Shown piece after piece: positions 117-58,209 of a stretch of DNA of 64,000 bases. The stretch's first letter is position 1; every line of letters starts with the position of its first letter. The translations under genes and the position numbers were made by a program. Below the pieces are notes generated by a model, which was given only the letters and a program-made list of their open reading frames with translations, ran no database searches and was not told the DNA's origin. The DNA is taken from positions 1 to 64,000 of IMG/VR virus record IMGVR_UViG_3300045971_000344. One strand, given 5' to 3'.

Positions 117-1067
117 AACATGCTCGGAGCGTTCTTCAGGGCTCATGCCCTTAAAAAGGTCTTTTACTCTTTTAGAATTAGCTTTTCTTATTTCTAAGTT
201 CTCTTCATCGGTTCTATTTGCTTTTGCCTTTGCTTTACCTTCCGAAATGCCTTTAGACATTTTCTCTTTAGTCTTTAATTTTTCTTCTTCTGACTTATTA
301 CGCATAGTTTCTAGTCGTCTTTTTGTTCTATCTTTAAGAACATCTTCAGGAGTATTTTTAATGGCGTTTTTGACAGCTATAGATATATTTTGTCGTCTTT
401 TATCCTTTTTCTCTTGCGAAGAGTTTTCTCTTCCTTCAATTAGCAGTTGAAGTCTAGTTTCCTTTTCTTCATCCGTCATCTTTTTATATTTTTCTTTCAT
501 TGTTTTTGAGCGTTTATTATTTATTTCTTCTATTTCTTCGTTTGTTTTATTTGACCACATTTTCTTAGACGTTAAACCTTTAGCTAACTTTTCTTCTTTG
601 GTATGCTTACAGCCCAAAGCTGTGCTAAGTCCACCCTTTGAATTATTAAGTAGAGGACCTGTCTTTATGTTTTTTCTACCAATTTTATCAATTAGTTTTT
701 CTTCTAGTTCAGCGGCTTCAAATTTAGTTATCCTAACACTTTTCATTTCAACTATGGCTGAAAGACCTTGTAAAATTAATTTCTTTAACACTCTTTTCAA
801 GTGTTTATTATGACTTTTACCATTTAAATGAGTATATACTCTTTCACCTTTACCTTCACCTACGTATAAAGGTTCGTGGCTAAATTTCCAATGTCCATAA
901 TAAAAAGGACCAGGTTTTCTAGGATCCAGCAAAGCATAGACATAGAAAATCTTTTGGTTATACCTTCTTAGTCTAGCATTGTCTAAACATTGTGCTTTTA
1001 CTTCTTGTACTCTAAGCTTTTCTTTTTTGGAAAGTTTCTTCTTGGATTTGGCTTTAGGGGTCTTCAT
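84..1067 (-). mobile_element. Free-standing GIY-YIG (LEM-3-like) homing endonuclease with basic helical C-terminal repeats
   Basis: FYVYALLDPRK...LYVGEGKGERVYTH...AAELEEKLI...LLNNSKGG fits the GIY-YIG core (Y..Y.G..R..E..N). GGAG lies 10 nt before ATG. Confidence 0.8.
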
Positions 1068-2718: not shown

Positions 2719-3158
2719 GAGTTATGTTTAATAGAGGTCCTGATGTAGTTGTTGCTCTTATAGAGCACAAAGAAAAGCCTGAGCATTTTCTTGTGCAGTA
2801 TAGAGCTCAAAGTAAACAATACTCAGGGTGGTTGGAATTCCCCGGTGGTAAAATGGAGCCGGGTGAAAATCCAGAATCAGCCTTATGCCGAGAAGTTAGG
2901 GAAGAAGTAGATATTACAATAGCCGGACACTGTAAGTTTGTGGAAATGGATTATTTATTCCCTTCTGGATTGTATCATAAAGTAATTTTCTACTTTGTTA
3001 AACCGGAGTACTGGATTAGAACACCTATCGGCATGGAGGGTCAGCGTATTGGATGGTTGACTTTGTTCCAGATAATGACCTATCCTAAAGTTTTGCCCTT
3101 AAATAGAGCAGCGGCATTAATATTAACTACAGAACGACATCCAGATATCCTGGAGTAA
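2715..3158 (+). CDS. NUDIX hydrolase (MutT-like)
   Basis: Nudix box GGKMEPGENPESALCREVREEVDI. Confidence 0.9.
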   Translation: MRVMFNRGPDVVVALIEHKEKPEHFLVQYRAQSKQYSGWLEFPGGKMEPGENPESALCREVREEVDITIAGHCKFVEMDYLFPSGLYHKVIFYFVKPEYWIRTPIGMEGQRIGWLTLFQIMTYPKVLPLNRAAALILTTERHPDILE

Positions 3159-4409: not shown

Positions 4410-4679
4410 ATGGACTGTAAAGGTTGTGGTAAATGCTGTGATATTACAAACGACCCTTATTTAGACGTAGAGTTGTTTGAGGAAGACAGGGTACCCATTT
4501 ATGGCCTGGAGTTTCGGTCATCTTCTGGACAATTTTACCTTAAAAGAAATCTTGATGGTACCTGTATTTTTCTAAATGAGAATAAAGAATGTGCTATCTA
4601 TAATGACCGACCTAGAGAATGTAGAGAGTTTACTCAAGAGCACTCAGTGTGTAAACGCTTAACAGGTAACGACTCATGA
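4410..4679 (+). CDS. YkgJ-family cysteine-cluster (CxxCxxCC) protein
   Basis: CKGCGKCC...CIFL...CAIYNDRPRECREF; ATG 4410 follows GGAGG. Confidence 0.85.
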   Translation: MDCKGCGKCCDITNDPYLDVELFEEDRVPIYGLEFRSSSGQFYLKRNLDGTCIFLNENKECAIYNDRPRECREFTQEHSVCKRLTGNDS

Positions 4680-5081
4680 CAAAAGATGAATTGCTTATAC
4701 ACCTTGAATACTGCATGGGCGATACAGAAATAATGGTTAAGATTGATGGCAGACTTTTACAGATTCAAGATGTTAACCACTACGCTCCAAAAGAGTCAAC
4801 AGCTAGATTTTTAATTTTAATACCAAATGAAAGAATACCTAGAAAATAGAGGTATGACTATTATGGATTTTTATATCGTCTTTACAGAACGTCAAAAGGA
4901 TAAAATAGAGCTTTGGAAGAAAACGTTACCAAAGTTAAAAGCAAAGGTTGTCCGATCTTTTGGAATAATCTTTGTTCCTACAGACAATGTAAATAAAGAT
5001 GGTAGAAGGATTTTTAAAGCCTACTTTAAAAGTTCTGATGGTCACAAATTTTTTGTGACTAAGAAAGCAATTTTACACTGA
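4676..5081 (+). other. Two small hypothetical CDS (4676..4849; about 4854..5081)
   Basis: Contiguous, coupled ORFs; no motifs. Confidence 0.5.
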
Positions 5082-5098: not shown

Positions 5099-5755
5099 AT
5101 GTTGGTAACAAAAATATTTCGATTCGAGGCCTGCCATTCAGTAAAAGACGCATACACTTGTAGATGTGACAGAACGCGGACAGATAAATCTGCCGGGGGC
5201 TTACACGGACATTCTTATGTTGTAGAGCTCACCCTTGAAGGGGATGTGGCAAAATCAGATGGAATGGTTATTGACTTCACTCTTGTTAGGGAAACTTTTA
5301 ACCATATAATTGATGCTTTTGACCACACTCTTGTTATTGGGGATACTGATAAAGTAATGGCAACCCTAGGTCCCTACATCTCAGCTCGTTATATAATTTT
5401 CCCTGGTAATCCAACTGCAGAGAATATGGCTGAATACTTCTTTAACTATCTTGATAGTTATCTTACTGACAACTACCTTTTAGGCGTAAGTGTATTCTCA
5501 GTAACCGTGTGGGAAACCGTTACAGGGAAAGCGACTAAGGTAAGAGAGATAAAAGGAGTTTTACCCAGTGACTTGTATATTAGTCCTGCCTTAGCTTATG
5601 GTTGGTCAGACTATGATAAGAAGACTTTTGAGTATAACAACGGACATATTTTAGAAGAAAAGCAGCTGATAACAAACATAACTACCCTAGATACAACTGA
5701 TTCTGCTGGTACTACCCTAAATTTTACTGCTACTCTTGGAAATAAAAACTGTTAA
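5099..5755 (+). CDS. queD: 6-carboxy-5,6,7,8-tetrahydropterin synthase (QueD/PTPS)
   Basis: TKIFRFEACH...LHGHSY...GMVIDF...FDH...NPTAENMA...VWET. Confidence 0.9.
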   Translation: MLVTKIFRFEACHSVKDAYTCRCDRTRTDKSAGGLHGHSYVVELTLEGDVAKSDGMVIDFTLVRETFNHIIDAFDHTLVIGDTDKVMATLGPYISARYIIFPGNPTAENMAEYFFNYLDSYLTDNYLLGVSVFSVTVWETVTGKATKVREIKGVLPSDLYISPALAYGWSDYDKKTFEYNNGHILEEKQLITNITTLDTTDSAGTTLNFTATLGNKNC

Positions 5756-5793
5756 TATACATTGATATTTGCTTAAAGGGGAGGTGATTCTCC

Positions 5794-7161
5794 ATTAGAC
5801 TATTCAGTCCAGAAACAGAGTTTAGAGTAATAGCTTCTATCTGCAATTCTCCTCCTAATTCAGTTACTACTACCTTTCTTTTATCCAGAATTACTACTGA
5901 GCACTTTCATTTTGATCCAGCAAAAGCCGCTTTTAAGCGAATAATGAAGTTGATGCAAACTAGTGGTAATATTCCTGGGTATAGAGAGTTAGAAGCTGAT
6001 CCAATATTGGATGAAGGCTTTAGAGCAGAAATATCTGCGTATGATGATAAAAAGAAAAAGATAAGACAAGAGAAAACCGCTAAGGCGGTATTTGATCTCT
6101 TAGAAAGCTATAGAAAAAAGAGGGTACTGTATAACGTAGCAAAGTCTACAATAGATAAATTAAAAGGCGAAGCTGTAGATGTAGACAGCCTTATACAGGC
6201 AATGGGTGATAATTTAGCTGTTGCAACCTCGGCTGTCTCAACAATTGAACAACTTGTCCACATAGGAGAAGGTAACAACAGCGTTGAGCTCGTTAAAGAG
6301 ATACTAGATGGAGAAGGTTCTCCAACTATTCCAACAGGTTTTAAGACGTTTGATGATAAAAATGGAGGATTCTTTAAGCAGGCAGTTGCGGTATTATCTT
6401 CAAATAGTTCAGGCGGTAAGTCCGTTTGCGCACTTCAGATGGCAATAAATATGTACTGGGCAGGGCAAAGCACTTGCGTACTCTCCTTAGAGATGAGTAA
6501 AGACCAGTACATGGCACGTTTCTTATCTAACATAAGTGGTGTATCTGCCTCAAGAATATTTTTGAAGAAACTTACTGAAGACGAAAAGAATGAAATACGA
6601 GCTGCCTATAAAAAGTTTGTTATCTTCGGAAAGAAAAATAATGTACGATGGACAATACTAGCCCCTGAAACTGGTTTATCACTTGACCAGTTACTTATGA
6701 CTTGTAAGCCCTATAGCTTTGACGTAGTAACAATTGACTATGCTACCTTATTAGAAGAGGCTGATGTAGATAACCAAGCACGAGCTTTGGCCTCAATTAC
6801 ACGCCGTTGTAAAGTATTCTCTCAAGTATCAAAATGTCTAGTTATAGTACTAGCTCAGTTGTCTGATGATGGGTTTATAAAATACAGTAGGGCGATAAAA
6901 GAAAATGCGGACCACGTTTGGACCTGGACTTTTTCCGATACGGAAAGAGAAACTCATAATATAACAATAAAAGTTGATAAAGGTAGAAACCAAATGTGTT
7001 TTCCTTTTGAAGTTACTGAAGATTTCTCAACTATGAGAATTATAGATAATGGACCCGTAAGATCATTCGATGAAGATACTGAAAACGAATTTTCAACAAA
7101 AAAGAAAAAGAAAGAGAAAGAAGAACCTGAAGATGATTATTTAGCGGAGGACGATATCTGA
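5794..7161 (+). CDS. dnaB: DnaB-like replicative helicase (probable ATT start at 5794)
   Basis: IPTGFKTFD, SNSSGGKS (Walker A), LSLEMS, VTIDY, VLAQLS, IKENAD, VDKGRN. The frame is open 50 codons upstream of ATG 5944 to an ATT downstream of GGGGAGGTG. Confidence 0.88.
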   Translation: MRLFSPETEFRVIASICNSPPNSVTTTFLLSRITTEHFHFDPAKAAFKRIMKLMQTSGNIPGYRELEADPILDEGFRAEISAYDDKKKKIRQEKTAKAVFDLLESYRKKRVLYNVAKSTIDKLKGEAVDVDSLIQAMGDNLAVATSAVSTIEQLVHIGEGNNSVELVKEILDGEGSPTIPTGFKTFDDKNGGFFKQAVAVLSSNSSGGKSVCALQMAINMYWAGQSTCVLSLEMSKDQYMARFLSNISGVSASRIFLKKLTEDEKNEIRAAYKKFVIFGKKNNVRWTILAPETGLSLDQLLMTCKPYSFDVVTIDYATLLEEADVDNQARALASITRRCKVFSQVSKCLVIVLAQLSDDGFIKYSRAIKENADHVWTWTFSDTERETHNITIKVDKGRNQMCFPFEVTEDFSTMRIIDNGPVRSFDEDTENEFSTKKKKKEKEEPEDDYLAEDDI

Positions 7162-20200: not shown

Positions 20201-21682
20201 ATGTCTTATAGTTTTGTGCCAGCAGCAATAGATTCTTTCGATGCTCGAGGAATGACCTTGTACGTTAAGTATACTAAGTCAAAGTCAAATAACGTCTTTA
20301 TTAAAGAGGACAACCCTAGATACACTTGGTTTATTTGCCCTGACCGAGAGCTCTTAATAGTTAAGAATACAGCACAAGAGTATCACCCTGCAGGTGAAAA
20401 CTTTGATGAGGCTATAAATCTAGATGTTTATGATGATAGAGTCTTACAAGAACTGGGCACCGATATCTATATGCTAAATAGTGGTGCCTTTGGAGACAAC
20501 CCAGAGAGGAGTCCGAGGCTTAGGCGTAATGGAAGAAATCCAAAGTTGGTCCAACCACATATTTTAGCAGACTCCGGAGGATTTCAGATTTTATCCGGGC
20601 GAACGGACTACATTGACCCTATAAAAGTAGTAGAATGGTATAACGAAAATACCGACTGGGGAATGGTATTGGACGTTCCACCAATTGTTTCTGATTGGGA
20701 CAACGTTAAACGCGGTGCTCGTATCCAGGCAAAAAATACTGAAATAATGTTTAAGCACAAAACTAAAGAGCTTGAACTTGTAAATGTTATCCAAGGATTT
20801 GACTCTAAGCAACGTGCCGCATTTTTAGACATGGTTGACCACCCGGAAATAAATAGGCTCGCTATAGCCGGCTCTTATAGGATTGAAAATCTTGTAGAGC
20901 GAATAACTGATATACTTAAGATTATTCACCTTGATAGAAAATTCAAGCATTACCATATTCTTGGTATCTATAGTTTGACCACGCTTTTACCTTTGATTCA
21001 GATCTCTAATTTGTCTACAGTAAATGCGCTTATAACTTCGGACGCAAGTACTCCCTTACAAAGTGCAGTTAATAAATTTTATCATCACCAACAAAGTATT
21101 TTTTCCCCAGAAAGGCGGCTACCTATTGGGCATAAAGATATCGTCTATAACTCACGTCTATATCTTCCCTGTCATTGCCCAGTATGTAGTGCAGTTAAAT
21201 ACCAGAATATTTTTAGTTTCGTAGATACTGGAGTTATAACGGCTCTTTTAACTTTGCACAACCTTTATGAGATTAATCGCTATACATCTATGATGAATGA
21301 GTTATCTCAAACAATAAGCTATAAAGAATATAGATCTATAACTCGGCATCAACTAGGCGGTCGAGCTCCGGCCACACTTCAAGCTCTGGATCTTATCCAT
21401 GAGTATTCAAAAGATCCAGATAAAGCGTTTAAGATCTATTCAGCTATAAATACAGGCTCTATGTTATTCAAGCCCTCACCTTTATACAAAGATATTTCTG
21501 ATACACCAATAGCGTTATTGGTAAAAGGTAATGGAGGAATTGAGAGAAAAGAAGAGACTGCGGAAGAAATGGTCGAACGCCAAAAGAGAGTATTACATAA
21601 CTACGAATCACGTTATAAAATAAAACCCAAGGATAACACAAAGAAAAAGAAAAAGAAGAAAAAATCTAAGGTAAAAGGATGA
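20201..21682 (+). CDS. Guanine transglycosylase (TGT/DpdA-like)
   Basis: ADSGGFQ, VLDVPP, VIQG, HILGI, SDAS, Zn site CHCPVC...HNL. Confidence 0.85.
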   Translation: MSYSFVPAAIDSFDARGMTLYVKYTKSKSNNVFIKEDNPRYTWFICPDRELLIVKNTAQEYHPAGENFDEAINLDVYDDRVLQELGTDIYMLNSGAFGDNPERSPRLRRNGRNPKLVQPHILADSGGFQILSGRTDYIDPIKVVEWYNENTDWGMVLDVPPIVSDWDNVKRGARIQAKNTEIMFKHKTKELELVNVIQGFDSKQRAAFLDMVDHPEINRLAIAGSYRIENLVERITDILKIIHLDRKFKHYHILGIYSLTTLLPLIQISNLSTVNALITSDASTPLQSAVNKFYHHQQSIFSPERRLPIGHKDIVYNSRLYLPCHCPVCSAVKYQNIFSFVDTGVITALLTLHNLYEINRYTSMMNELSQTISYKEYRSITRHQLGGRAPATLQALDLIHEYSKDPDKAFKIYSAINTGSMLFKPSPLYKDISDTPIALLVKGNGGIERKEETAEEMVERQKRVLHNYESRYKIKPKDNTKKKKKKKKSKVKG

Positions 21683-51334: not shown

Positions 51335-52099
51335 ATGGTAGCTAAATTAGTAACCTCAATCTCAGATCGAGAATTGATGGTTAATTTTATCAGACAGGAC
51401 TTTTATAGAGACAAATTTGTATTGGCTTTAATTTCAGGAAACACTGCGGAGTATTCAAGTAAAAGTATACTTCTTTTTGATGATCTAAAAACCTTGAAGG
51501 ACAGTGCAAAAGAAATAAAAAATGTAAATGATAATATGTCATACGTTGCCTATGCGTATGGCATAGAAATCGGGTCTGACAGCTGGATGGATGAAAACAT
51601 AAGCGAAGAAATGCTTAAGTTAAATAAGGCCCCTGTTTGGATTGATATACAAAGAACCGCCACTAAGATACCTGTAATAGGAGTAGGTGGAGGAGCGATG
51701 GCGAATCTGTTCTCTTGTCGCTATGTATTGACTCCAAAGAAAACGCTGAAGCGAGCACTGTTTATTAGACACGCAGGTGACCTTTGCAACTCTAAAAATC
51801 AGGCTTTAGTTCCAGTTATGTGCAATGATCTTATAGTAGATGTTTCTGGAATGAAACCGTTTGATTTAAACAATCCGGACATTACCATTAAGCTTTATCG
51901 GGTAGCAACTATCCATGAAATGAAATTAGAATGTGAAGATGTGTCGGAAAAACTTGATGGGTCCTGTATAATACAAAAAGTAGTGGAAGGTGCCCATACC
52001 TATCATAATAGGGATGGTTCATACTTCTGTTCGGAGTTGAAGGTAAAAAATAAGAAGGAGGGGGTTCCAGAGCAAGACGAAGATACACAACAAGAGTAA
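51335..52099 (+). CDS. Hypothetical protein
   Basis: ORF with GGAGG RBS. Confidence 0.65.
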   Translation: MVAKLVTSISDRELMVNFIRQDFYRDKFVLALISGNTAEYSSKSILLFDDLKTLKDSAKEIKNVNDNMSYVAYAYGIEIGSDSWMDENISEEMLKLNKAPVWIDIQRTATKIPVIGVGGGAMANLFSCRYVLTPKKTLKRALFIRHAGDLCNSKNQALVPVMCNDLIVDVSGMKPFDLNNPDITIKLYRVATIHEMKLECEDVSEKLDGSCIIQKVVEGAHTYHNRDGSYFCSELKVKNKKEGVPEQDEDTQQE

Positions 52100-52112
52100 G
52101 TGTAAAGAAGGA

Positions 52113-52128
52113 AACTGTAAATTATTAT
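52113..52128 (+). promoter_or_regulatory. AACTGTAAAT motif copy
   Basis: AACTGTAAATTATTAT in the intergenic region. Confidence 0.55.
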
Positions 52129-52206
52129 CAGTAGCAGCCATCGCAGTAGAAGCAACTATCAAACTCAGCCAAGTCTGAGTAAAACCCAGAAAGGAAGACA
52201 ATCACC

Positions 52207-53154
52207 ATGGCAAAAGAAACTAAAGAAGAAAAAGCAGCACGTTTGGCCAAAGAAGCAAAACTCGCAGAGCGCGCCCGTAAGAAGGCTGAAAAAGAAGCCG
52301 CAGCTAAACAGGCCGCCAAAGAAGCAGAGAAGGCTCGCAAGAAGGCTGAGAAGGAAGCAGCTTCTAAAAAGCCTGCGAAAGCTGAAAAGCCTGCTAAGTC
52401 AGAAAAGGCACCCAAAGCAGGTAAAGGTAAGGCAGCGAAAGCAGAAAACAATGCAACTGTTCTGGTCCAGGCACGAACCGTGCGTGAACTCACAGGAACA
52501 ATCGCTTCAATCACCGGCGAAGAGATTCAGCTTATTCACAAAATGCCGAGGTCTTCAAAAGCTGTTCTCCGTACAATCGCTATCGCCGATGTACTGTTCT
52601 TTAAAGGTGAAGAAGGTTCCTACGGTGAAGTTTCTTTCTACGGTAACGAAGTTCTGGTCGATGATAAAGGTATTAGCGGCAAAGACAAGACTACGGGGTT
52701 TGTTACTGTCACTAACAGAAACGGCGAAGTTATCGCCATCAACCCTGATCAGCCAGAAGGTTCTGATTCAGAAATCCTCGTTCTGGTAGACGAAGAGATT
52801 GCAAAGCGTCCTAAGAAAGAAAAGGGCGAAAAAGAAGAGAAATCCGGTAAGGGCCGTAAGGCAAAAGACGAGGACGAAGATGAGGACGAGGACGAGGATG
52901 ATGAAAAACCTAAGCGTGGCCGTAAGCCTGGTAAGCCCGTAGAGGATGATGAGGATGATGAGGATGAAGAAGATGAAGATGATGATGATGAAGATGAGGA
53001 TGAAGATGAGGATGAAGATGATGATGATGAAGATGATGATGATGATGATGAAGACGAAGATGATGAGGATGATGATGAAGATGAGGATGAAGATGAGGAT
53101 GAAGATGAGGATGAAGATGAGGATGAAGATGAAGATGAAGATGATGACGACTAG
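52207..53154 (+). CDS. Protein with Lys/Ala-rich N-terminus, beta-rich core and ~70-residue Asp/Glu tail
   Basis: Translation; GAT/GAG/GAA repeat tract about 52870-53151. Confidence 0.7.
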   Translation: MAKETKEEKAARLAKEAKLAERARKKAEKEAAAKQAAKEAEKARKKAEKEAASKKPAKAEKPAKSEKAPKAGKGKAAKAENNATVLVQARTVRELTGTIASITGEEIQLIHKMPRSSKAVLRTIAIADVLFFKGEEGSYGEVSFYGNEVLVDDKGISGKDKTTGFVTVTNRNGEVIAINPDQPEGSDSEILVLVDEEIAKRPKKEKGEKEEKSGKGRKAKDEDEDEDEDEDDEKPKRGRKPGKPVEDDEDDEDEEDEDDDDEDEDEDEDEDDDDEDDDDDDEDEDDEDDDEDEDEDEDEDEDEDEDEDEDEDDDD

Positions 53155-53209
53155 TCATTAGCTTAATCTGAAGACGAGGATGATGACGAAGAGGAATTTC
53201 ATTTAGCCT

Positions 53210-53490
53210 GAACTTACCAGGTAGTATCTGAGTTATAGTAAGTCAGCTCTTTATCAGAGTTGTCGAGAAGCTCAGGTGCTGTATAGAGACGAAATAGATA
53301 GGACAGTGAAATGTACCACAGTGTTTAAGCCCTTAGCGGCAGTCCCGACCGGTATCCGGTCATTGCCATCCCCCGAATTGAACAGCGTAAGATAGCTGTT
53401 AGTTCTTCGCCCACAGATGTTATGCCATGTGGGCGCCGTCGGCGCGTAGGGAGTCGCTTGCTTTTACACACATCGCCCGGTACAACTAGC
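53210..53490 (+). ncRNA. Structured RNA with collinear similarity to the 16S rRNA head (about nt 976-1240)
   Basis: GAACTTACCAGGT, TCAGAG, CAGGTGCTG, GTGAAATGT, TTAAGCCC, TATCC..TTGCCA, GATG, TACACAC..TACAA in rRNA order and near-rRNA spacing; many hairpins; no ORF. Confidence 0.55.
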
Positions 53491-53494
53491 CGAC

Positions 53495-53593
53495 AAGTTA
53501 TAATTGTCCGTTTAGGATAGTGCGGAGACTATGAAGCTGTGGCGCCAGCAGCGGTGGAGTCACCCTTGAAATACGCACCGGAAATTATAATTT
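53495..53593 (+). ncRNA. 23S rRNA L1-stalk (H76-H78) mimic
   Basis: Ungapped match to recalled E. coli 23S 2113-2178 with compensatory pairs; 15-bp closing stem 53495-53510/53579-53593. Confidence 0.85.
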
Positions 53594-53629
53594 CTATTTC
53601 GTTTTCTAAAATCTTAGGAGTGATGAGCC

Positions 53630-54175
53630 ATGAGAACAAAAACCTTAAAAGTAATAATACGAAATGCCATAGCTATGGCTTCAAGTCCTTTTGAATGTGT
53701 AAAGTATATCGCTCGTGAGTTGGAAGAAAATAATGTAGAGTACTGCGTTATCGGGGGAGTAGCACTTTCAACTTATAACTACGAAAGAAATACTAATGAC
53801 GTAGATCTATTGGTATCTAAAGAAGGCTTTAGTATAATAAAAAATAACTTTATTGGTCGTGGGTATACGCTTAGACCAGGTTCAACAAAAAACCTTAATT
53901 ATTTAGCTCCTTCTGGTAAAGTACCTATTGATATACTTGTAGAGGGAGACCGAGAGGGAACAATTGTTCTACCCAAACCAAAAGGTATACGAGAAAAACG
54001 TGGTGGTATATGGTACTTAACCTTACCCAAACTCATTGAGTTTAAGTTAAACGCTAATAGACCGGAGGACAGACAAGACGTACTGAAATTAATAAAGTTA
54101 AATGACTTGGGTCCCGAATTGGTTCAGGCAATTGAAGGCCCTGCTAGTATAAAATACTTAGAGTTGTTGGGTTGA
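53630..54175 (+). CDS. Minimal nucleotidyltransferase (Pol-beta superfamily)
   Basis: YCVIGGVAL...RNTNDVDLLV...IDIL...LIEFKL..RPEDRQDV. Confidence 0.8.
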   Translation: MRTKTLKVIIRNAIAMASSPFECVKYIARELEENNVEYCVIGGVALSTYNYERNTNDVDLLVSKEGFSIIKNNFIGRGYTLRPGSTKNLNYLAPSGKVPIDILVEGDREGTIVLPKPKGIREKRGGIWYLTLPKLIEFKLNANRPEDRQDVLKLIKLNDLGPELVQAIEGPASIKYLELLG

Positions 54176-54185
54176 TAACGCTAAT

Positions 54186-54272
54186 GGGCGAGTAGTCGAA
54201 TGGCATAGACAAAGGATTTAAAATCCTTGGCCCGTAAGGGAGTGATGGGTTCAAGTCCCTCCTCGCCCACCA
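54186..54272 (+). tRNA. tRNA-Leu (anticodon UAA), CCA encoded
   Basis: GGGCGAG/CTCGCCC acceptor stem, AAGGA-TTTAAAA-TCCTT anticodon arm, long variable arm, GTTCAAGT T-loop, ACCA end. Confidence 0.95.
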
Positions 54273-54295
54273 TAAAATAAATGTCCGTCAAGAAT

Positions 54296-54324
54296 TTGAC
54301 ATTTAATATCAGCTATGTTATAAT
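54296..54324 (+). promoter_or_regulatory. sigma70 consensus promoter
   Basis: TTGACA-17-TATAAT; leader similar to that of the 42661 promoter. Confidence 0.88.
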
Positions 54325-54384
54325 GAATTATGGGGAATACTCCGGAGGAACTCACATTAAAATTAATGAAAGGGGGTGAATTGA

Positions 54385-54879
54385 ATGAAAATGTTAAAAG
54401 TTATAATCGAAGAAATAAGAGTTGCAGTTAATTCCTCCGACCTCTCCGATGAAGAAAAGTACCAAAGAGTGCTATCTTCGGCTATGCCAATTTCAGCCGC
54501 AAAATTTAAGATTATTGCTCAGTCAGAAGCTTTGATCTTGCACGTAGCAAAAAGAAAGTTATTTCCGCAAGACATTCATAATTGGGAAAAAGATATTGCA
54601 ACAAAAATGCTGGAAAGAATTTCCAGAATAAAATCAGATTTAGATAATTCTGATATAAAGAACTTATTGCTGGAAGGTAAAAATGAAGACCACGAAATGT
54701 TGGATTATTTAGAAGATGCAGTTGAAGCAGTTACAAAGAAGAATAAAAAAGCAAAGCCGATTCAATTTACAGAACAGCAGTTGTTACAAACCTGGACAAC
54801 CTTTGTAGAACTATTTATACAAAATTATGAACAAGGATCACATTATACGGAACACCAGGTCAGAGCCTGGTTACAATAA
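54385..54879 (+). CDS. Hypothetical protein, paralog of 43642..44172
   Basis: Direct sequence comparison. Confidence 0.6.
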   Translation: MKMLKVIIEEIRVAVNSSDLSDEEKYQRVLSSAMPISAAKFKIIAQSEALILHVAKRKLFPQDIHNWEKDIATKMLERISRIKSDLDNSDIKNLLLEGKNEDHEMLDYLEDAVEAVTKKNKKAKPIQFTEQQLLQTWTTFVELFIQNYEQGSHYTEHQVRAWLQ

Positions 54880-54939
54880 TTAAATAACCCGCAAACCACC
54901 CCAACGGCGCTCTAAAAGGTCAACGGAAAGGATCGCATC

Positions 54940-55656
54940 ATGAAAACAAAGTCAATATCGTACCAGAAAGCAATCTCGCTTTTAAAAGCCCACCTTGAGA
55001 CTTCCCTTCAGCATATAACGTCACTCAATCCAGAGTGTACGTTGCTCAACGCCACAAAATCCTATCTTAGCAATAAAAATGAAATCCTACTTAGTAGTGG
55101 AGCAAAGCTCTATTACAACCCCGAGTTTCCTGAACCTTGGTTTATCGGAGGGTATTCAGGTGACGGATCCGATGTAGACTGCTATTTCGATAGGTCTATA
55201 ATGAACCGGTTAATAAAATTCCATAGCATCTGTCCCTCATGCAACCCCGTAGTTAAACAGAAAATAAAGCTCCGAAAACTCCTTAAAGATTTTTTGGAGT
55301 CAGATATCAGATGCACCTGGATCAGAACAGGTAAAGTATCAGTGTATATTCGTAAGAGTTGGAGGTCGTTTAATGGAGAGCAGTCCTCTGTTAATAAAGG
55401 GCTTATCTCTAATTGCTTTGATATTGCAAATATACAAATCCACCCGTCCCTTAGAAACCTGGGCATCTTTAAGTCCTTCATGCAGATCGTAGATGAAGAG
55501 GTAAGGTCTACGGAAACCGGAGTGTATATCCTTATCGAGAACATTGAAAACAAGTTCCTAAAGAATTGGTGCATAAATAATAACTGGAAAAAAGTATCAT
55601 CCGAGTATGATGAAGTAAGTTACTACAAACCCATGGAAAGGAGAAGCGTATTATGA
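54940..55656 (+). CDS. Protein with C-terminal GNAT-like acetyltransferase domain
   Basis: FDIANIQIHPSLRNLGIFK (motif A-like), ILIENIENKFLKNW. Confidence 0.6.
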   Translation: MKTKSISYQKAISLLKAHLETSLQHITSLNPECTLLNATKSYLSNKNEILLSSGAKLYYNPEFPEPWFIGGYSGDGSDVDCYFDRSIMNRLIKFHSICPSCNPVVKQKIKLRKLLKDFLESDIRCTWIRTGKVSVYIRKSWRSFNGEQSSVNKGLISNCFDIANIQIHPSLRNLGIFKSFMQIVDEEVRSTETGVYILIENIENKFLKNWCINNNWKKVSSEYDEVSYYKPMERRSVL

Positions 55657-58209
55657 TTGAGTCGTATATTAAGTCCAACACTGTAGAACGAAAGACCTGT
55701 CTTGGTGAGGAGGCTAGTGATTGGGGACAAATGTCTTTGGAGACAGTCCGGGCGTTAGTCTCAGTAGGTATTCCCCTTGGATTCAATTTTTCTTTCAGCA
55801 AAATCTATGAAGGTCCAAATGATGACTATGAACCGGTTGTCATAACAGCATTGGGTGACAACCTTTTTGTTTATCCAGAATATCCGGGCGATGACAGAGA
55901 AGAGGCGATGGCAGGATTCTGGGGCGCAGTAGATGCCTACAAAAACAATCAAAAACAGATAATATCAGATATCTGTGCTGATGTGGTTGACGAGTGGAAC
56001 AATACTCGAAAAGGGAACAGGCGTAATAACCGGGTCGGTCTAATTAGTCTGGCCGGAAAAGCAAAACATACCCGAATAATTTCTGATTGGCTGGCAACAT
56101 TTACCTCTGGTATGACTATAAGTGAGGCATGTGCAGTAATTTCAACTAATCCTGCAATTGTTAAGAAACTAGAGGATGTACGCGATACTGTTAGACTGAA
56201 TATCTGTGAAAAGAGTTTATTTAATCTTGAAGGAGAGAGACGTAGTACAACAGGAGATAGGAGGAAAAAATGACTGGAACTTTATCCGCGCTAGGACAAA
56301 ATGATTCTCTTATAATTCCAGAATTGACGGAATTAGAAAAAGAATTGGACTTAGACTTTGTAAAGATCAAGCGTAGGTGTAGCGATGCAATGTGGAAAAC
56401 TGATGATACTACTATTATCCTATTTATAGCAAAGTTGTTAAGGGTAAAATTACAATAACCTGGAGGAAGCATCTATGAAGACGTCGCATGAGCAACATAA
56501 AGGGATGAAGATCGCATTACTTGATGGACGTTCAGGTAAGGTTGTAAAGGTATTGCCAGACCGTTATAAAATAAAGATCGCAGATGAGCAATTTTGGATA
56601 AGTATAAAAGATATAAAATGGACAAAGACAAACAAGCTATTTCAGACAGAAACGGACTACACGGGTAAACTTTGTGTACTTCAAAGTAGCGGAGTTGCAA
56701 ATGGAACAATAGTTAAGATCCAAAAGAAGGAATCAGACGGGTGGAGGTTTCATTATTCCACAGGTTGTGGGGGAGTAACCCACGGGTGTAATCTAAAGCC
56801 GATAGAAAAAGGCAATGGCTCTATTCGGATGACAGCAGAAGGTCAGTGTATCTGTGACTGTTGTGGAGCAACGTTTGAGCAAGAACAGATGCAGTTGTAC
56901 TTCATCCGAAATTCCGATGGACCTAAAAACGGTGTTGTCTGTAATATTTGTAATAAATTTATTCATCCGTTTTTGGTATTCAATTCTTCATACAACCTCG
57001 AATTGGATGTTGTTCTACCCACGACTCCAGGTTCGCACCCTATCCGGACATTTGATGTAAAGAACTTAAAAGAACTGAATGACCGGGTTAGGACCAAATT
57101 AGAGACCCTGTCAAAGGACTTGGATTTGGTAATAATAGAGTCGCATAAACAGGTCCGTCCTACTGCAATGGAGTACAAAGTTCTGGTTAAGTTACATTCT
57201 GATGTTGAGCCAAAATTAAACTCTCAAGGTAAGACCACTAAGAAAGGAAAATGATATGGGACAACAAAGGTCACAGAATAAATCCGATAAAGTGGTTTGG
57301 GTTTGTTGTATCTGCGGGGCCAACCCAGACACCTTTTCTTGTAAGCACAAAAATTTAGGCCCATCTGGAATGGTTAGTGAGATCGATTACAAGAAGGTCC
57401 AAAAAATGATTGAGGACCAAAAAATTAGAACAGAAAATCAACTAAAAATATTAAGAAAATAATAGGGGAATCTTACTTATGAAAGTAGCATACTGTCCAA
57501 AATGTAAAGACCTGTTTAAACTGATTTTTGATGTCCGTTCATGCCGTTGCGGAGAGTCAAGTGGTGTCCTAATGCAGGATAAAATGTCCGTCCAGATAAA
57601 CGGACCTACAAAGGTAATTGGTATTGAGGACCGAAGTTTCTTTGAGGCAGTAAATAAGCAACCTAAAAGCGGTAGCGGGAAGGACTTTAAGGCCTTTGTT
57701 TTGCCCATTGAAAACAAAAGCGTTAGGGCAATTATTCCAAATCCAGCGCCGGCCCAAGCAGTTCCAGCTTCAACTCCAATTATAGAAGATTTGATAAGTG
57801 TAGATATCGAGGTTAAAAAAGAAGATAATGAGTTAAAAGGAGAATGACCATGAATACTAATAAGGACCCTCAAGCGAGAGCACACAACCTGGAGAAGGTT
57901 AGAGAAATGATGACGGTTCCTCCAAATGAAGATGTTACTGTTACTCAAAAGGTTCATCGGATAATGATTACCCGATTGAGCTTACAAGGGTTGCAACCTA
58001 AAATAGATGTATTGAACAGTACGCCCTTGTGCACTGGGTGGATGGTTTTTCTTAACAAGGCCGGCACATTGGCTCATATTATGCACGCTGAAGATGTTGT
58101 GGACGGGTCTTACATACGGATGAAAATTCCGAGCGGAGTGGCGGGTGCGCATGAGGAATTCATGCGTCGCTGGTTTTATAACCGTATGGTTCATCGCTAC
58201 GTTATTTAA
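55653..58209 (+). other. Run of hypothetical CDS (55653..56273, 56270..56458, 56475..57254, 57256..57462, 57479..57847, 57844..58209)
   Basis: Coupled ORFs with RBS. Confidence 0.6.

What the first reader, a model, noticed from the sequence alone, without database searches (positions are those of the whole stretch)
53495..53593. Complete 23S rRNA L1-stalk mimic with compensatory substitutions
Seen: 53513-53578 aligns without gaps to recalled E. coli 23S 2113-2178 (44 of 66 identical by my count). Both T-loop strands (AGGATAG, CTTGAAATAC), the TGAAG/TGGAG kink-turn strands and the GCCA loop are kept. H77 changes GGUGG/CCACC to GUGCG/CGCAC (three double substitutions) and G2128-C2160 becomes A-U. 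H76 is replaced by an unrelated AT-rich 15-bp stem in the same register. This pattern indicates selection on structure, not decay. Known: this element binds uL1 (which also represses the rplK-rplA operon) and grips the tRNA elbow via interdigitated T-loops; the G2112 equivalent is U here. Inference: a phage RNA that titrates uL1, captures tRNAs or decoys ribosome-targeting defences. I know of no described phage ncRNA like this.
Basis: partly seen in the sequence, partly recalled or inferred. Interest (0 to 1): 0.95.

Follow-up and report, generated by a model that had tools for sequence, protein, structure and literature searches.

The report
Phage-encoded mimic of ribosomal L1 stalk
A giant bacteriophage carries a free-standing ~100-base RNA gene that copies the head of the ribosome's L1 stalk, the part that binds protein uL1 and grips tRNA. 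Similar copies sit next to tRNA genes in at least a dozen unrelated phages, which points to an undescribed class of phage RNA.

Summary
Window 53513-53578 aligns without gaps to the E. coli 23S L1-stalk head, with 45/66 bases identical; the next best 66-mer in the window scores 32. All differences lie in paired positions and keep the pairing. The flanks form a private 15-bp helix in the register of H76. The element lies in a 475-nt intergenic region of a 295-kb phage contig, 595 nt upstream of a co-oriented tRNA-Leu.

It is not unique. Pattern scans found about 14 lineages of isolated L1-head modules in other phage contigs, each with its own unrelated closing helix. On their alignment 85% of cells pair, against 62% in shuffles and 40-47% in slid controls. 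In two pairs of related phages the module is a conserved island in diverged flanks. Eight of 14 lineages lie within 2 kb of co-oriented tRNA genes, against 1 of 50 control loci.

No scanned species genome carries the window's H77. Rfam, cultured-phage records and the searchable literature hold nothing comparable.

Function is inferred, not shown. The most likely role is an rRNA-grade binding site for host uL1, possibly one that also docks tRNA elbows. The window's platform base 2112 is U, which is atypical for rRNA.

The parts
53495..53510 (+). 5' strand of the private closing helix (H76 analogue), AAGUUAUAAUUGUCCG, with bulged G at 53507
   Evidence: Pairs with 53579-53593 in the MFE fold and as inverted repeat I2. 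No similarity to E. coli H76.
53511..53519 (+). Junction UUU (2111-2113 equivalents; U at the 2112 platform position) followed by T-loop 1, AGGAUA (2114-2119)
   Evidence: T-loop and platform definitions come from PMC3664808.
53520..53524 (+). H77 5' strand, GUGCG
   Evidence: Pairs with 53574-53578. Three double substitutions relative to E. coli. This helix is 100% paired across 13 phage modules.
53525..53561 (+). GA linker plus H78. Base pairs GAC/GUC; internal loop UAUGAAG/UGGA; distal stem CUGUGGC/GCAGCGG; GCCA loop at 53544-53547
   Evidence: The distal stem covaries at 7 of 7 pairs among phage modules.
53562..53573 (+). Bulge loop ACCCUUGAAAUA containing T-loop 2, UGAAA (53567-53571; A2169 equivalent at 53569)
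   Evidence: Identical to E. coli from CCUUGAAAUA onward.
53574..53578 (+). H77 3' strand, CGCAC
53579..53593 (+). 3' strand of the closing helix, CGGAAAUUAUAAUUU
53594..53607 (+). U-rich tail CUAUUUCGUUUUCU directly after the closing helix. It may be a 3' end or terminator tail.
   Evidence: Read from the sequence. Not called by the terminator scan. Clearer stem-plus-U-run tails follow the module in L029, L140/L143 and L137.
53310..53494 (+). G+C-rich upstream stretch that may be a second structured RNA domain of the same transcript. Whether it belongs to the element is uncertain.
   Evidence: GC is 0.54 against about 0.40 nearby. Fold z = -3.0 on the + strand and -0.44 on the - strand. No Rfam match and no similarity to 23S.
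54186..54272 (+). tRNA-Leu(UAA), a co-oriented neighbour 595 nt downstream. Listed as context, not as part of the RNA.

Best explanation
Window 53495-53593 encodes a free-standing structured RNA of about 100 nt, read on the + strand. It reproduces the head of the 23S rRNA L1 stalk: H77, H78 and the two interlocked T-loops, mounted on its own AT-rich closing helix in place of H76. It belongs to a recurrent class of phage RNAs, not found in Rfam or the searched literature, that sit in or beside phage tRNA gene clusters and are kept by selection on structure.

Most likely mechanism (inferred). The RNA folds on its own, as isolated L1-stalk fragments do in vitro, and binds the host's free uL1 with rRNA-grade affinity. 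That affinity is more than tenfold above the affinity of the rplK-rplA operator. The RNA would therefore compete with nascent 23S rRNA and with the operator for uL1. The result would be an L1-stalk particle outside the ribosome whose T-loop platform and bound uL1 can dock on tRNA elbows.

Shown here: the sequence match, the fold-compatible covariation, the recurrence in unrelated phages, and the linkage to tRNA genes with matching orientation.

Inferred: expression, uL1 binding, any tRNA contact, and the benefit to the phage.
For: - Gap-free match to the L1-stalk head, far above background.
- All differences from the nearest bacterial 23S (56/66 identical) fall in paired positions.
- No scanned species genome has this H77.
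- Thirteen isolated phage modules support the L1 secondary structure. 84.9% of cells pair, against 61.6% in shuffles (0 of 500 reach the observed value) and 40-47% when partners are slid. H77 is 100% paired, with double changes at 3 of 5 pairs. The closing helices have unrelated sequences yet pair in register. RNAalifold predicts the same helices independently.
- The module is a conserved island: 81-83% identity against 37-60% in the flanks, in two pairs of related phages, with compensatory changes.
- The flanks are not rRNA, and Rfam finds no LSU match around the window element.
- Co-oriented tRNA genes lie within 2 kb in 8 of 14 lineages against 1 of 50 control loci, p = 5.5e-6.
- A 55-nt rRNA fragment suffices for specific, tight L1 binding across species, and rRNA binds more than tenfold tighter than the mRNA operator (PMC2175363; PMC10931766).
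- The window keeps the GGAG junction (2124-2127), its partner C residues and the GCCA loop.
Against: - There are no expression data.
- No uL1 contact list could be retrieved (the key paper is not held), so intact uL1 determinants rest on general knowledge.
- Natural uL1 operators do without T-loops, so uL1 binding alone does not explain why the whole head is kept.
- Platform base 2112 is U in the window and a pyrimidine in 3 of 13 modules, against 13 of 591 rRNAs (p = 0.004). This weakens the case for canonical tRNA stacking.
- The benefit to a phage of sequestering uL1 is unclear.
- No close relative of this particular copy was found.
- The T-loop, GGAG and AG columns of the relatives were fixed by my search patterns, so their invariance among relatives is by construction.
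Confidence: 0.45

Rival explanations
1. It is a tRNA-handling module. The double T-loop head docks on the elbow of phage or host tRNAs, mainly in cis on neighbouring tRNAs within a shared precursor. There it would chaperone folding, time RNase P processing, or shield the elbow from enzymes that recognise it. uL1 would be dispensable or only an accessory.
For: - Placement is tight and co-oriented with tRNAs: 40-41 nt upstream of tRNA-Arg(ACG) in three diverged syntenic phages (L024, L067, L269), 17 nt after tRNA-Ile in L137, and 108 nt before tRNA-Thr in L265.
- The full head is retained, although uL1 operators do not need it.
Against: - The platform base is U in the window and variable (G, A or U) among modules.
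- In the window the nearest tRNA is 595 nt away, beyond an ORF.
- Six of 14 lineages show no tRNA in the DNA fetched.
- From general knowledge, stacking alone gives weak binding in trans.
Confidence: 0.27
2. It is a cis-acting, uL1-responsive leader. Bound uL1 represses or attenuates the downstream nucleotidyltransferase ORF (53630-54175) and tRNA-Leu, tying their expression to the pool of free uL1 in the way the rplK-rplA operator does.
For: - The module ends 23 nt before the AGGAG ribosome-binding site and 37 nt before the ATG.
- Same-strand ORFs start 20-40 nt after the module in L140/L143 and L135/L136.
- A U-rich tract follows the closing helix.
Against: - Homologues of the nucleotidyltransferase in other contigs lack the upstream RNA.
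- In many lineages the next feature is a tRNA, or nothing lies on that strand.
- No shared downstream gene family was found.
- The terminator scan does not call the site.
Confidence: 0.1
3. It is a decoy for a factor other than uL1 that recognises the L1 stalk, such as an rRNA-modifying enzyme, an rRNA-targeting toxin or a defence sensor.
For: The only support is the general logic of phage decoys and the retention of the complete head.
Against: I know of no toxin or defence system that targets the L1 stalk, and none surfaced in the literature searches. No defence or anti-defence genes were recognised next to the element.
Confidence: 0.08
4. It is a neutral relic, either a piece of host 23S rDNA picked up by illegitimate recombination or an assembly chimera, and has no function.
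For: rRNA fragments and chimeras do occur in viral contig collections: L004, L007, L064, L144 and L157.
Against: - Only the 66-nt head is rRNA-like, and it is bounded exactly by a complementary non-rRNA helix.
- Its H77 is absent from all scanned genomes.
- Substitutions are compensatory.
- The same design recurs in unrelated phages with covariation and conserved-island behaviour.
Confidence: 0.05

Closest known systems
Head of the 23S rRNA L1 stalk (H76-H78 with uL1)
   Same: H77, H78, both T-loops, the GGAG junction and the GCCA loop match position for position. Identity is 45/66 with E. coli and 56/66 with the nearest bacterial 23S.
   Different: - It is not part of an rRNA.
- H76 is replaced by an unrelated AT-rich 15-bp helix that ends the RNA, and H75, H79 and the rest of domain V are absent.
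- Its H77 sequence is seen in no scanned genome.
- Platform base 2112 is U.
- It is encoded by a phage beside a tRNA gene.
uL1 autoregulatory operators in rplK-rplA mRNAs (bacteria) and L1 mRNAs (archaea)
   Same: These are also non-ribosomal RNAs that copy the uL1 site of 23S rRNA (PMC10931766, PMC2175363).
   Different: The operators are minimal irregular hairpins without T-loops. They bind uL1 more than tenfold more weakly than rRNA and sit in the mRNA they regulate. The phage element copies the whole head and is not linked to any r-protein gene.
[quoted passage not shown]
   Same: They share the six-nucleotide core (AG..A and UG..A) and use a platform to dock the tRNA elbow (PMC3664808).
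   Different: The phage element is homologous in sequence to the rRNA version and includes H78, which T-box leaders lack. It has no specifier loop, antiterminator or catalytic domain, and Rfam gives no T-box or RNase P match.
Phage tRNA gene clusters and the small stable RNAs encoded within them (for example the T4 tRNA-region RNAs of unknown function, recalled from memory)
   Same: It is a small structured RNA gene lying among or beside phage tRNA genes on the same strand.
   Different: It is neither a tRNA nor tRNA-like (ARAGORN). No similarity to any cultured phage record was detected. The T4 RNAs themselves were not compared.

Membership tests
[quoted passage not shown] 2013, PMC3664808) | Six conserved core nucleotides: AG..A in T-loop 1 and UG..A in T-loop 2 | tested here: met
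   The window has AGGAUA at 53514-53519 and UGAAA at 53567-53571. Among relatives these columns were fixed by my search patterns, so only the window counts as a test.
[quoted passage not shown] 2013, PMC3664808) | An extra residue, almost always U, between the 4th and 5th nucleotide of T-loop 1 | tested here: met
   U at 53518 (AGGA-U-A), the equivalent of U2118.
[quoted passage not shown] 2013, PMC3664808) | Functional platform 2112:2169 is purine:purine (578 of 591 rRNAs) | tested here: not met
   The window has U53512 with A53569. The platform base is a pyrimidine in 3 of 13 phage modules against 13 of 591 rRNAs, p = 0.004. A U-A platform may still stack; this was not tested.
[quoted passage not shown] 2013, PMC3664808) | Reciprocal intercalation of the two T-loops in three dimensions | not testable with these tools
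   No RNA 3D prediction or probing was available.
Bacterial 23S rRNA (Rfam RF02541) | The L1 stalk is continuous with H75, H79 and the rest of domain V | tested here: not met
   No LSU match in the window at gathering score or at E <= 10. The flanks show no similarity to 23S. True 23S copies carry the conserved ...CUAA flank, which is absent here.
Bacterial 23S rRNA L1-stalk head | A 5-bp H77 and a bipartite H78 with a 4-nt loop in the canonical register | tested here: met
   Gap-free alignment with pairs kept through double substitutions. Covariation among 13 modules.
uL1 binding site (rRNA or mRNA motif) | The conserved H77/H78 junction (G-C pairs flanking GGAG, 2124-2127) recognised by uL1 domain I | tested here: inconclusive
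   GGAG at 53524-53527, with partner C residues at 53574 and 53561, is present. The published contact list could not be retrieved, and binding itself cannot be tested in silico.
T-box leader | Specifier loop, T-box sequence and a terminator/antiterminator switch | tested here: not met
   No Rfam T-box match at E <= 10 in 52000-55500. No alternative pairing was seen.
tRNA or tRNA-like structure | A cloverleaf detectable by ARAGORN or Rfam | tested here: not met
   Only tRNA-Leu at 54186-54272 is called.
Intrinsic terminator | A G+C-rich hairpin with a small loop, followed by a U-run | tested here: not met
   Not called at 53495-53607. The helix is AT-rich and encloses the whole module. Clearer stem-plus-U-run tails occur in L029, L143 and L137.

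The most novel reading that the evidence does not exclude
Large phages of many lineages carry a dedicated rRNA-domain decoy gene in their tRNA islands. The RNA recruits host uL1 to form a free L1-stalk particle. That particle either re-routes tRNAs, for example by holding deacylated or phage tRNAs by the elbow or hiding them from elbow-reading nucleases, or rewires r-protein feedback control. This would be the first case of a virus copying a functional ribosomal RNA domain as a trans-acting tool, and a fourth natural context for the double T-loop tRNA dock.
Probability: 0.3. Interest if true: 0.95.

Novelty: categorically new. Interest (0 to 1): 0.86.

Why it matters
Phages are known to carry tRNAs, tmRNA, a few ribosomal proteins and translation factors. 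A free-standing, structure-selected copy of a functional rRNA domain appears in none of the sources I could search.

If the RNA binds uL1 or tRNA elbows, it reveals a new route by which viruses act on the translation machinery. It would also supply a minimal, naturally evolved L1-stalk head in many sequence variants for structural and single-molecule work. [quoted passage not shown]

There is a practical point too. Partial matches to the large-subunit rRNA model inside phage contigs (L024 and L029) are not necessarily contamination.

Tried and rejected
- **Mis-registered pattern.** The scan was off by one base and returned 41 chance matches. I re-used these as control loci for tRNA proximity.
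- **Spurious matches.** About 80 matches of 75 nt are a coding sequence of gut phages, not RNA modules.
- **Link to the downstream nucleotidyltransferase.** Rejected. Homologues at 49-74% identity sit in tightly packed gene rows without the RNA, and the covariance model finds no copy there.
- **Close relatives of this copy.** None in viral contigs by protein, and none in metagenomes or genomes by the window-specific H77 pattern.
- **Cultured phages and plasmids.** Only true rRNA genes or contaminants were found.
- **Shared neighbouring proteins among module-bearing phages.** None (tblastn; Pfam).
- **Upstream domain as a mimic of the uL11-binding GTPase centre.** This was my own idea, prompted by a recalled GCCAUC...AGCGUAA resemblance. 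Rejected: local alignment to the whole 23S scores 21, against a shuffle mean of 22, and blastn finds nothing.
- **Phage attachment site inside a 23S gene.** Rejected on anatomy. Only the 66-nt head is present, bounded by a complementary non-rRNA helix.
- **Second model hit in L150 (18.6 bits).** This is a coding repeat.
- **Donor or host inference from H78.** The GACUAUGAAGC...GUGGAGUCA type occurs in Bacteroidota, Alphaproteobacteria, Dehalococcoidia and others, so it is not diagnostic.
- **Retrieval of the uL1-RNA contact paper (PMC548342).** Failed.

Full report
**1. What is in the sequence**

The window is the first 64 kb of IMG/VR contig UViG_3300045971_000344 (294,944 bp), and window coordinates equal contig coordinates. 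The surrounding genes are phage replication functions: a DnaB-like helicase, a RecA/UvsX-like protein, a clamp loader, a Dda/PIF1-like helicase and a TGT-family enzyme. Most other ORFs have no family.

The element lies in a 475-nt intergenic region (53155-53629). Upstream is an ORF with an acidic repeat tail (52207-53154). Downstream is a 181-aa ORF with weak nucleotidyltransferase matches (53630-54175; PF14907, E = 1.8e-5, below the curated cut-off). That ORF is followed by tRNA-Leu(UAA) at 54186-54272. All of these lie on the + strand.

**2. Check of the observation**

blastn of 53480-53610 against complete E. coli genomes hits only 23S rRNA genes, in 4886 of 5426 genomes. MAFFT aligns the core without gaps. 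Over 53513-53578 identity is 45/66. The best other ungapped 66-mer on either strand of the window reaches 32 (mean 16.3, sd 3.5).

- Both T-loops, the GGAG junction, the UGAAG and UGGAG strands and the GCCA loop are identical to E. coli.
- H77 is GUGCG/CGCAC in place of GGUGG/CCACC, which is three pairs changed on both sides.
- The second pair of H78 is A-U in place of G-C.
- Five of the seven distal H78 pairs are also changed on both sides, with one G.A mismatch.
- The flanks 53495-53510 and 53579-53593 form a 15-bp AT-rich helix with one bulged G. Its innermost G-C pair is in the register of G2110-C2179.
- The 2112 equivalent is U.

**3. It is not rRNA, and not a recent copy of any known rRNA**

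Rfam gives no large-subunit rRNA match in the window, even at E <= 10. The flanks have no similarity to 23S.

A scan of one genome for each of 185,579 bacterial and archaeal species for an L1 head carrying this H77 found nothing. A metagenome scan with the same pattern also found nothing.

A second genome scan retrieved about 100 true 23S genes that share the outer H78 sequence. The closest is an alphaproteobacterial MAG, identical at 56/66. All ten differences lie in H77 or the distal H78 stem. True 23S genes in that set always read GUGU before AGGAUAGG and carry the conserved ...CUAA flank, which the window lacks.

The simplest history is capture of an L1 head from a bacterial rRNA, followed by compensatory evolution inside phage genomes.

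**4. The same design recurs in unrelated phages**

Pattern scans of IMG/VR left all stem positions free. One metagenome scan used the same approach. Besides true rRNA and chimeras (L004, L007, L064, L144, L157, L266, L267), they returned isolated L1-head modules in about 14 lineages:

- the window
- L003
- L024/L067/L269
- L029/L042
- L140/L143/L147
- L041
- L135/L136
- L137
- L142/L150
- L149/L155
- L153
- L156 (the same contig as L268)
- L265

Most come from contigs of 100-300 kb. They lie in intergenic DNA. Their local proteins have no similarity to the window's, and no neighbouring protein family is shared. Each has its own closing helix of unrelated sequence.

On an alignment of 13 modules (A2), the L1 secondary structure I wrote down pairs 84.9% of cells. 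Column shuffles give 61.6% (0 of 500 reach the observed value), and sliding the partners by 1-3 columns gives 40-47%. H77 is 100% paired, with double changes at three of five pairs: GGUGG, GUGCG, GGUCG, GGCGG, GUCGG, GUGGG and GCUGG, each with a matching partner strand. All seven distal H78 pairs and all eight closing-helix pairs show double changes. RNAalifold predicts the same helices without being told.

*Caveat.* The T-loop, GGAG and AG columns were fixed by my search patterns. Their invariance among relatives is therefore by construction. The stems and the 2112 column are unbiased.

**5. Selection within phage lineages**

L024, L067 and L269 are syntenic: the module is followed 40-41 nt later by tRNA-Arg(ACG). 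L024 and L269 are 83% identical in the module but 53-60% in the flanks, spacer and tRNA. They differ by compensatory changes in H77 (GGUGG/CCACC against GGUAG/CUACC), in H78 and in the closing helix.

L029 and L143 are 81% identical across the module, closing helix and U-run, but 37-42% in the flanks. They show an A-U to U-A swap in the closing helix and an A-U to G-C swap at the base of H78. Removing the 20 pattern-fixed positions still leaves 76-78% identity in the modules.

This is the behaviour of a functional RNA, not of decaying rDNA.

**6. Link to tRNA genes**

Eight of 14 lineages have tRNA genes within 2 kb. In all eight the tRNAs are on the strand that makes the module rRNA-sense.

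| Lineage | Position relative to tRNA |
|---|---|
| Window | 595 nt upstream of tRNA-Leu |
| L024/L067/L269 | 40-41 nt upstream of tRNA-Arg(ACG), inside arrays of 9-11 tRNAs |
| L029/L042 | 517 nt upstream of an 8-tRNA array |
| L137 | 17 nt after tRNA-Ile, inside a 10-tRNA array |
| L265 | 108 nt upstream of tRNA-Thr |
| L153, L156 | 1-1.6 kb from tRNAs |

Among 50 control loci fetched by chance pattern matches, one has a tRNA or tmRNA within 2 kb; Fisher p = 5.5e-6. The module therefore behaves as a member of the phage's stable-RNA gene islands and is most likely transcribed in the rRNA sense.

**7. How it may work**

*Established background.*
- The L1-stalk head folds through the interaction of two T-loops and binds uL1.
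- Its 2112:2169 platform stacks on the G19-C56 pair of the tRNA elbow (PMC3664808; PMC5309774).
- A 55-nt rRNA fragment is enough for specific, tight binding of L1, even across domains of life.
- rRNA binds L1 more than tenfold tighter than the mRNA operator of the L11-L1 operon, and that difference is the basis of feedback control (PMC2175363; PMC10931766).

*Inference.* An RNA with the complete head should bind free host uL1 as well as nascent 23S rRNA does, and better than the operator. I take that as the most likely direct activity. The downstream consequence remains open. It could be titration of uL1, or a free L1-stalk particle that handles tRNAs.

*Pointers toward a tRNA role.* The position among tRNA genes, and retention of the whole head although uL1 operators need no T-loops.

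*Pointers against a canonical tRNA dock.* The platform base is U in the window and a pyrimidine in 3 of 13 modules, whereas 578 of 591 rRNAs have purine:purine (p = 0.004).

*A cis-regulatory reading.* A uL1-responsive leader of the nucleotidyltransferase and tRNA-Leu unit fits the 23-nt spacing to the ribosome-binding site. It is not supported by the nucleotidyltransferase homologues, which lack the RNA, or by the diversity of downstream features in other phages.

**8. Comparison with what is known**

Structurally this is an L1-stalk head. It is not a member of 23S rRNA, T-box leaders, RNase P or tRNAs (see the membership table). The closest functional analogy is rRNA mimicry by r-protein operators, but those are minimal and sit in r-protein mRNAs.

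- Rfam 15 has no family for it. Only the bacterial LSU model touches the most rRNA-like relatives (L024 at 63 bits, L029 at 55 bits).
- The cultured-phage collection holds only rRNA contaminants.
- Ten full-text searches found no description. The nearest paper reports a cyanophage that encodes the protein uL1, not an RNA.

Subscription journals are not covered, so prior description cannot be excluded.

**9. Verdict**

The element is a structure-selected RNA gene and one instance of a recurrent, tRNA-linked class of phage RNAs that copy the L1-stalk head.

| Claim | My estimate |
|---|---|
| The element is a functional RNA | about 0.85 |
| It binds uL1 | about 0.6 |
| uL1 capture, with or without tRNA docking, is the selected function | about 0.45 |

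Noticed in passing
window 53310-53494 (+): A G+C-rich stretch (0.54 against about 0.40 nearby) directly upstream of the L1 module. It folds better than shuffles on the + strand only (z = -3.0 against -0.44). It has no Rfam match and no similarity to 23S. It may be a second RNA domain of the same transcript.
   Followed up: partly
window 54296-54324 (+): A perfect sigma-70 consensus promoter (TTGACA, 17-nt spacer with TG, TATAAT) just after tRNA-Leu and ahead of the ORF at 54385-54879. This is unusual in a jumbo phage region with no other strong matches.
   Followed up: no
window 52860-53154 (+), end of ORF 52207-53154: A long Asp/Glu repeat tail (GAT/GAA/GAG runs). It causes spurious snoRNA-like Rfam hits and is the only part of 52000-56000 that matches cultured jumbo phages of Erwinia, Xanthomonas, Pseudomonas and Dickeya.
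   Followed up: partly
window 20201-21682 (+): An ORF with a queuine tRNA-ribosyltransferase (TGT) family match (E = 1.5e-6) next to a RecA-like gene. It may be a DpdA-like enzyme for 7-deazaguanine DNA modification.
   Followed up: no
L064 (IMGVR_UViG_3300049694_000004) 5457-6469: A tobamovirus contig (IRES_Tobamo and TMV UPD-PK3 matches) whose 3' tRNA-like end runs straight into a 23S-like fragment. This is probably a chimeric assembly in the viral collection.
   Followed up: partly
L024 about 4675-4700, L067 about 340-365, L269 about 667-692 (- strand): A conserved motif, AAACCYNCGTTTCCTTTT followed by a short A/T stretch and ATGC, lies between the L1-like module and tRNA-Arg(ACG) in three diverged phages. 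It could be a promoter or a processing signal.
   Followed up: no
L029 2555-2575; L143 1845-1865; L137 about 2790-2800 (-): In several phages the closing helix of the module is followed at once by a conserved U-run, so the whole module may double as the hairpin of a terminator.
   Followed up: partly
L003 (IMGVR_UViG_3300000032_000059), bases 1-91: An L1-like module almost identical to gammaproteobacterial 23S in the head but with non-rRNA upstream sequence. It lies 14 nt from the contig end, so its 3' context is unknown.
   Followed up: no
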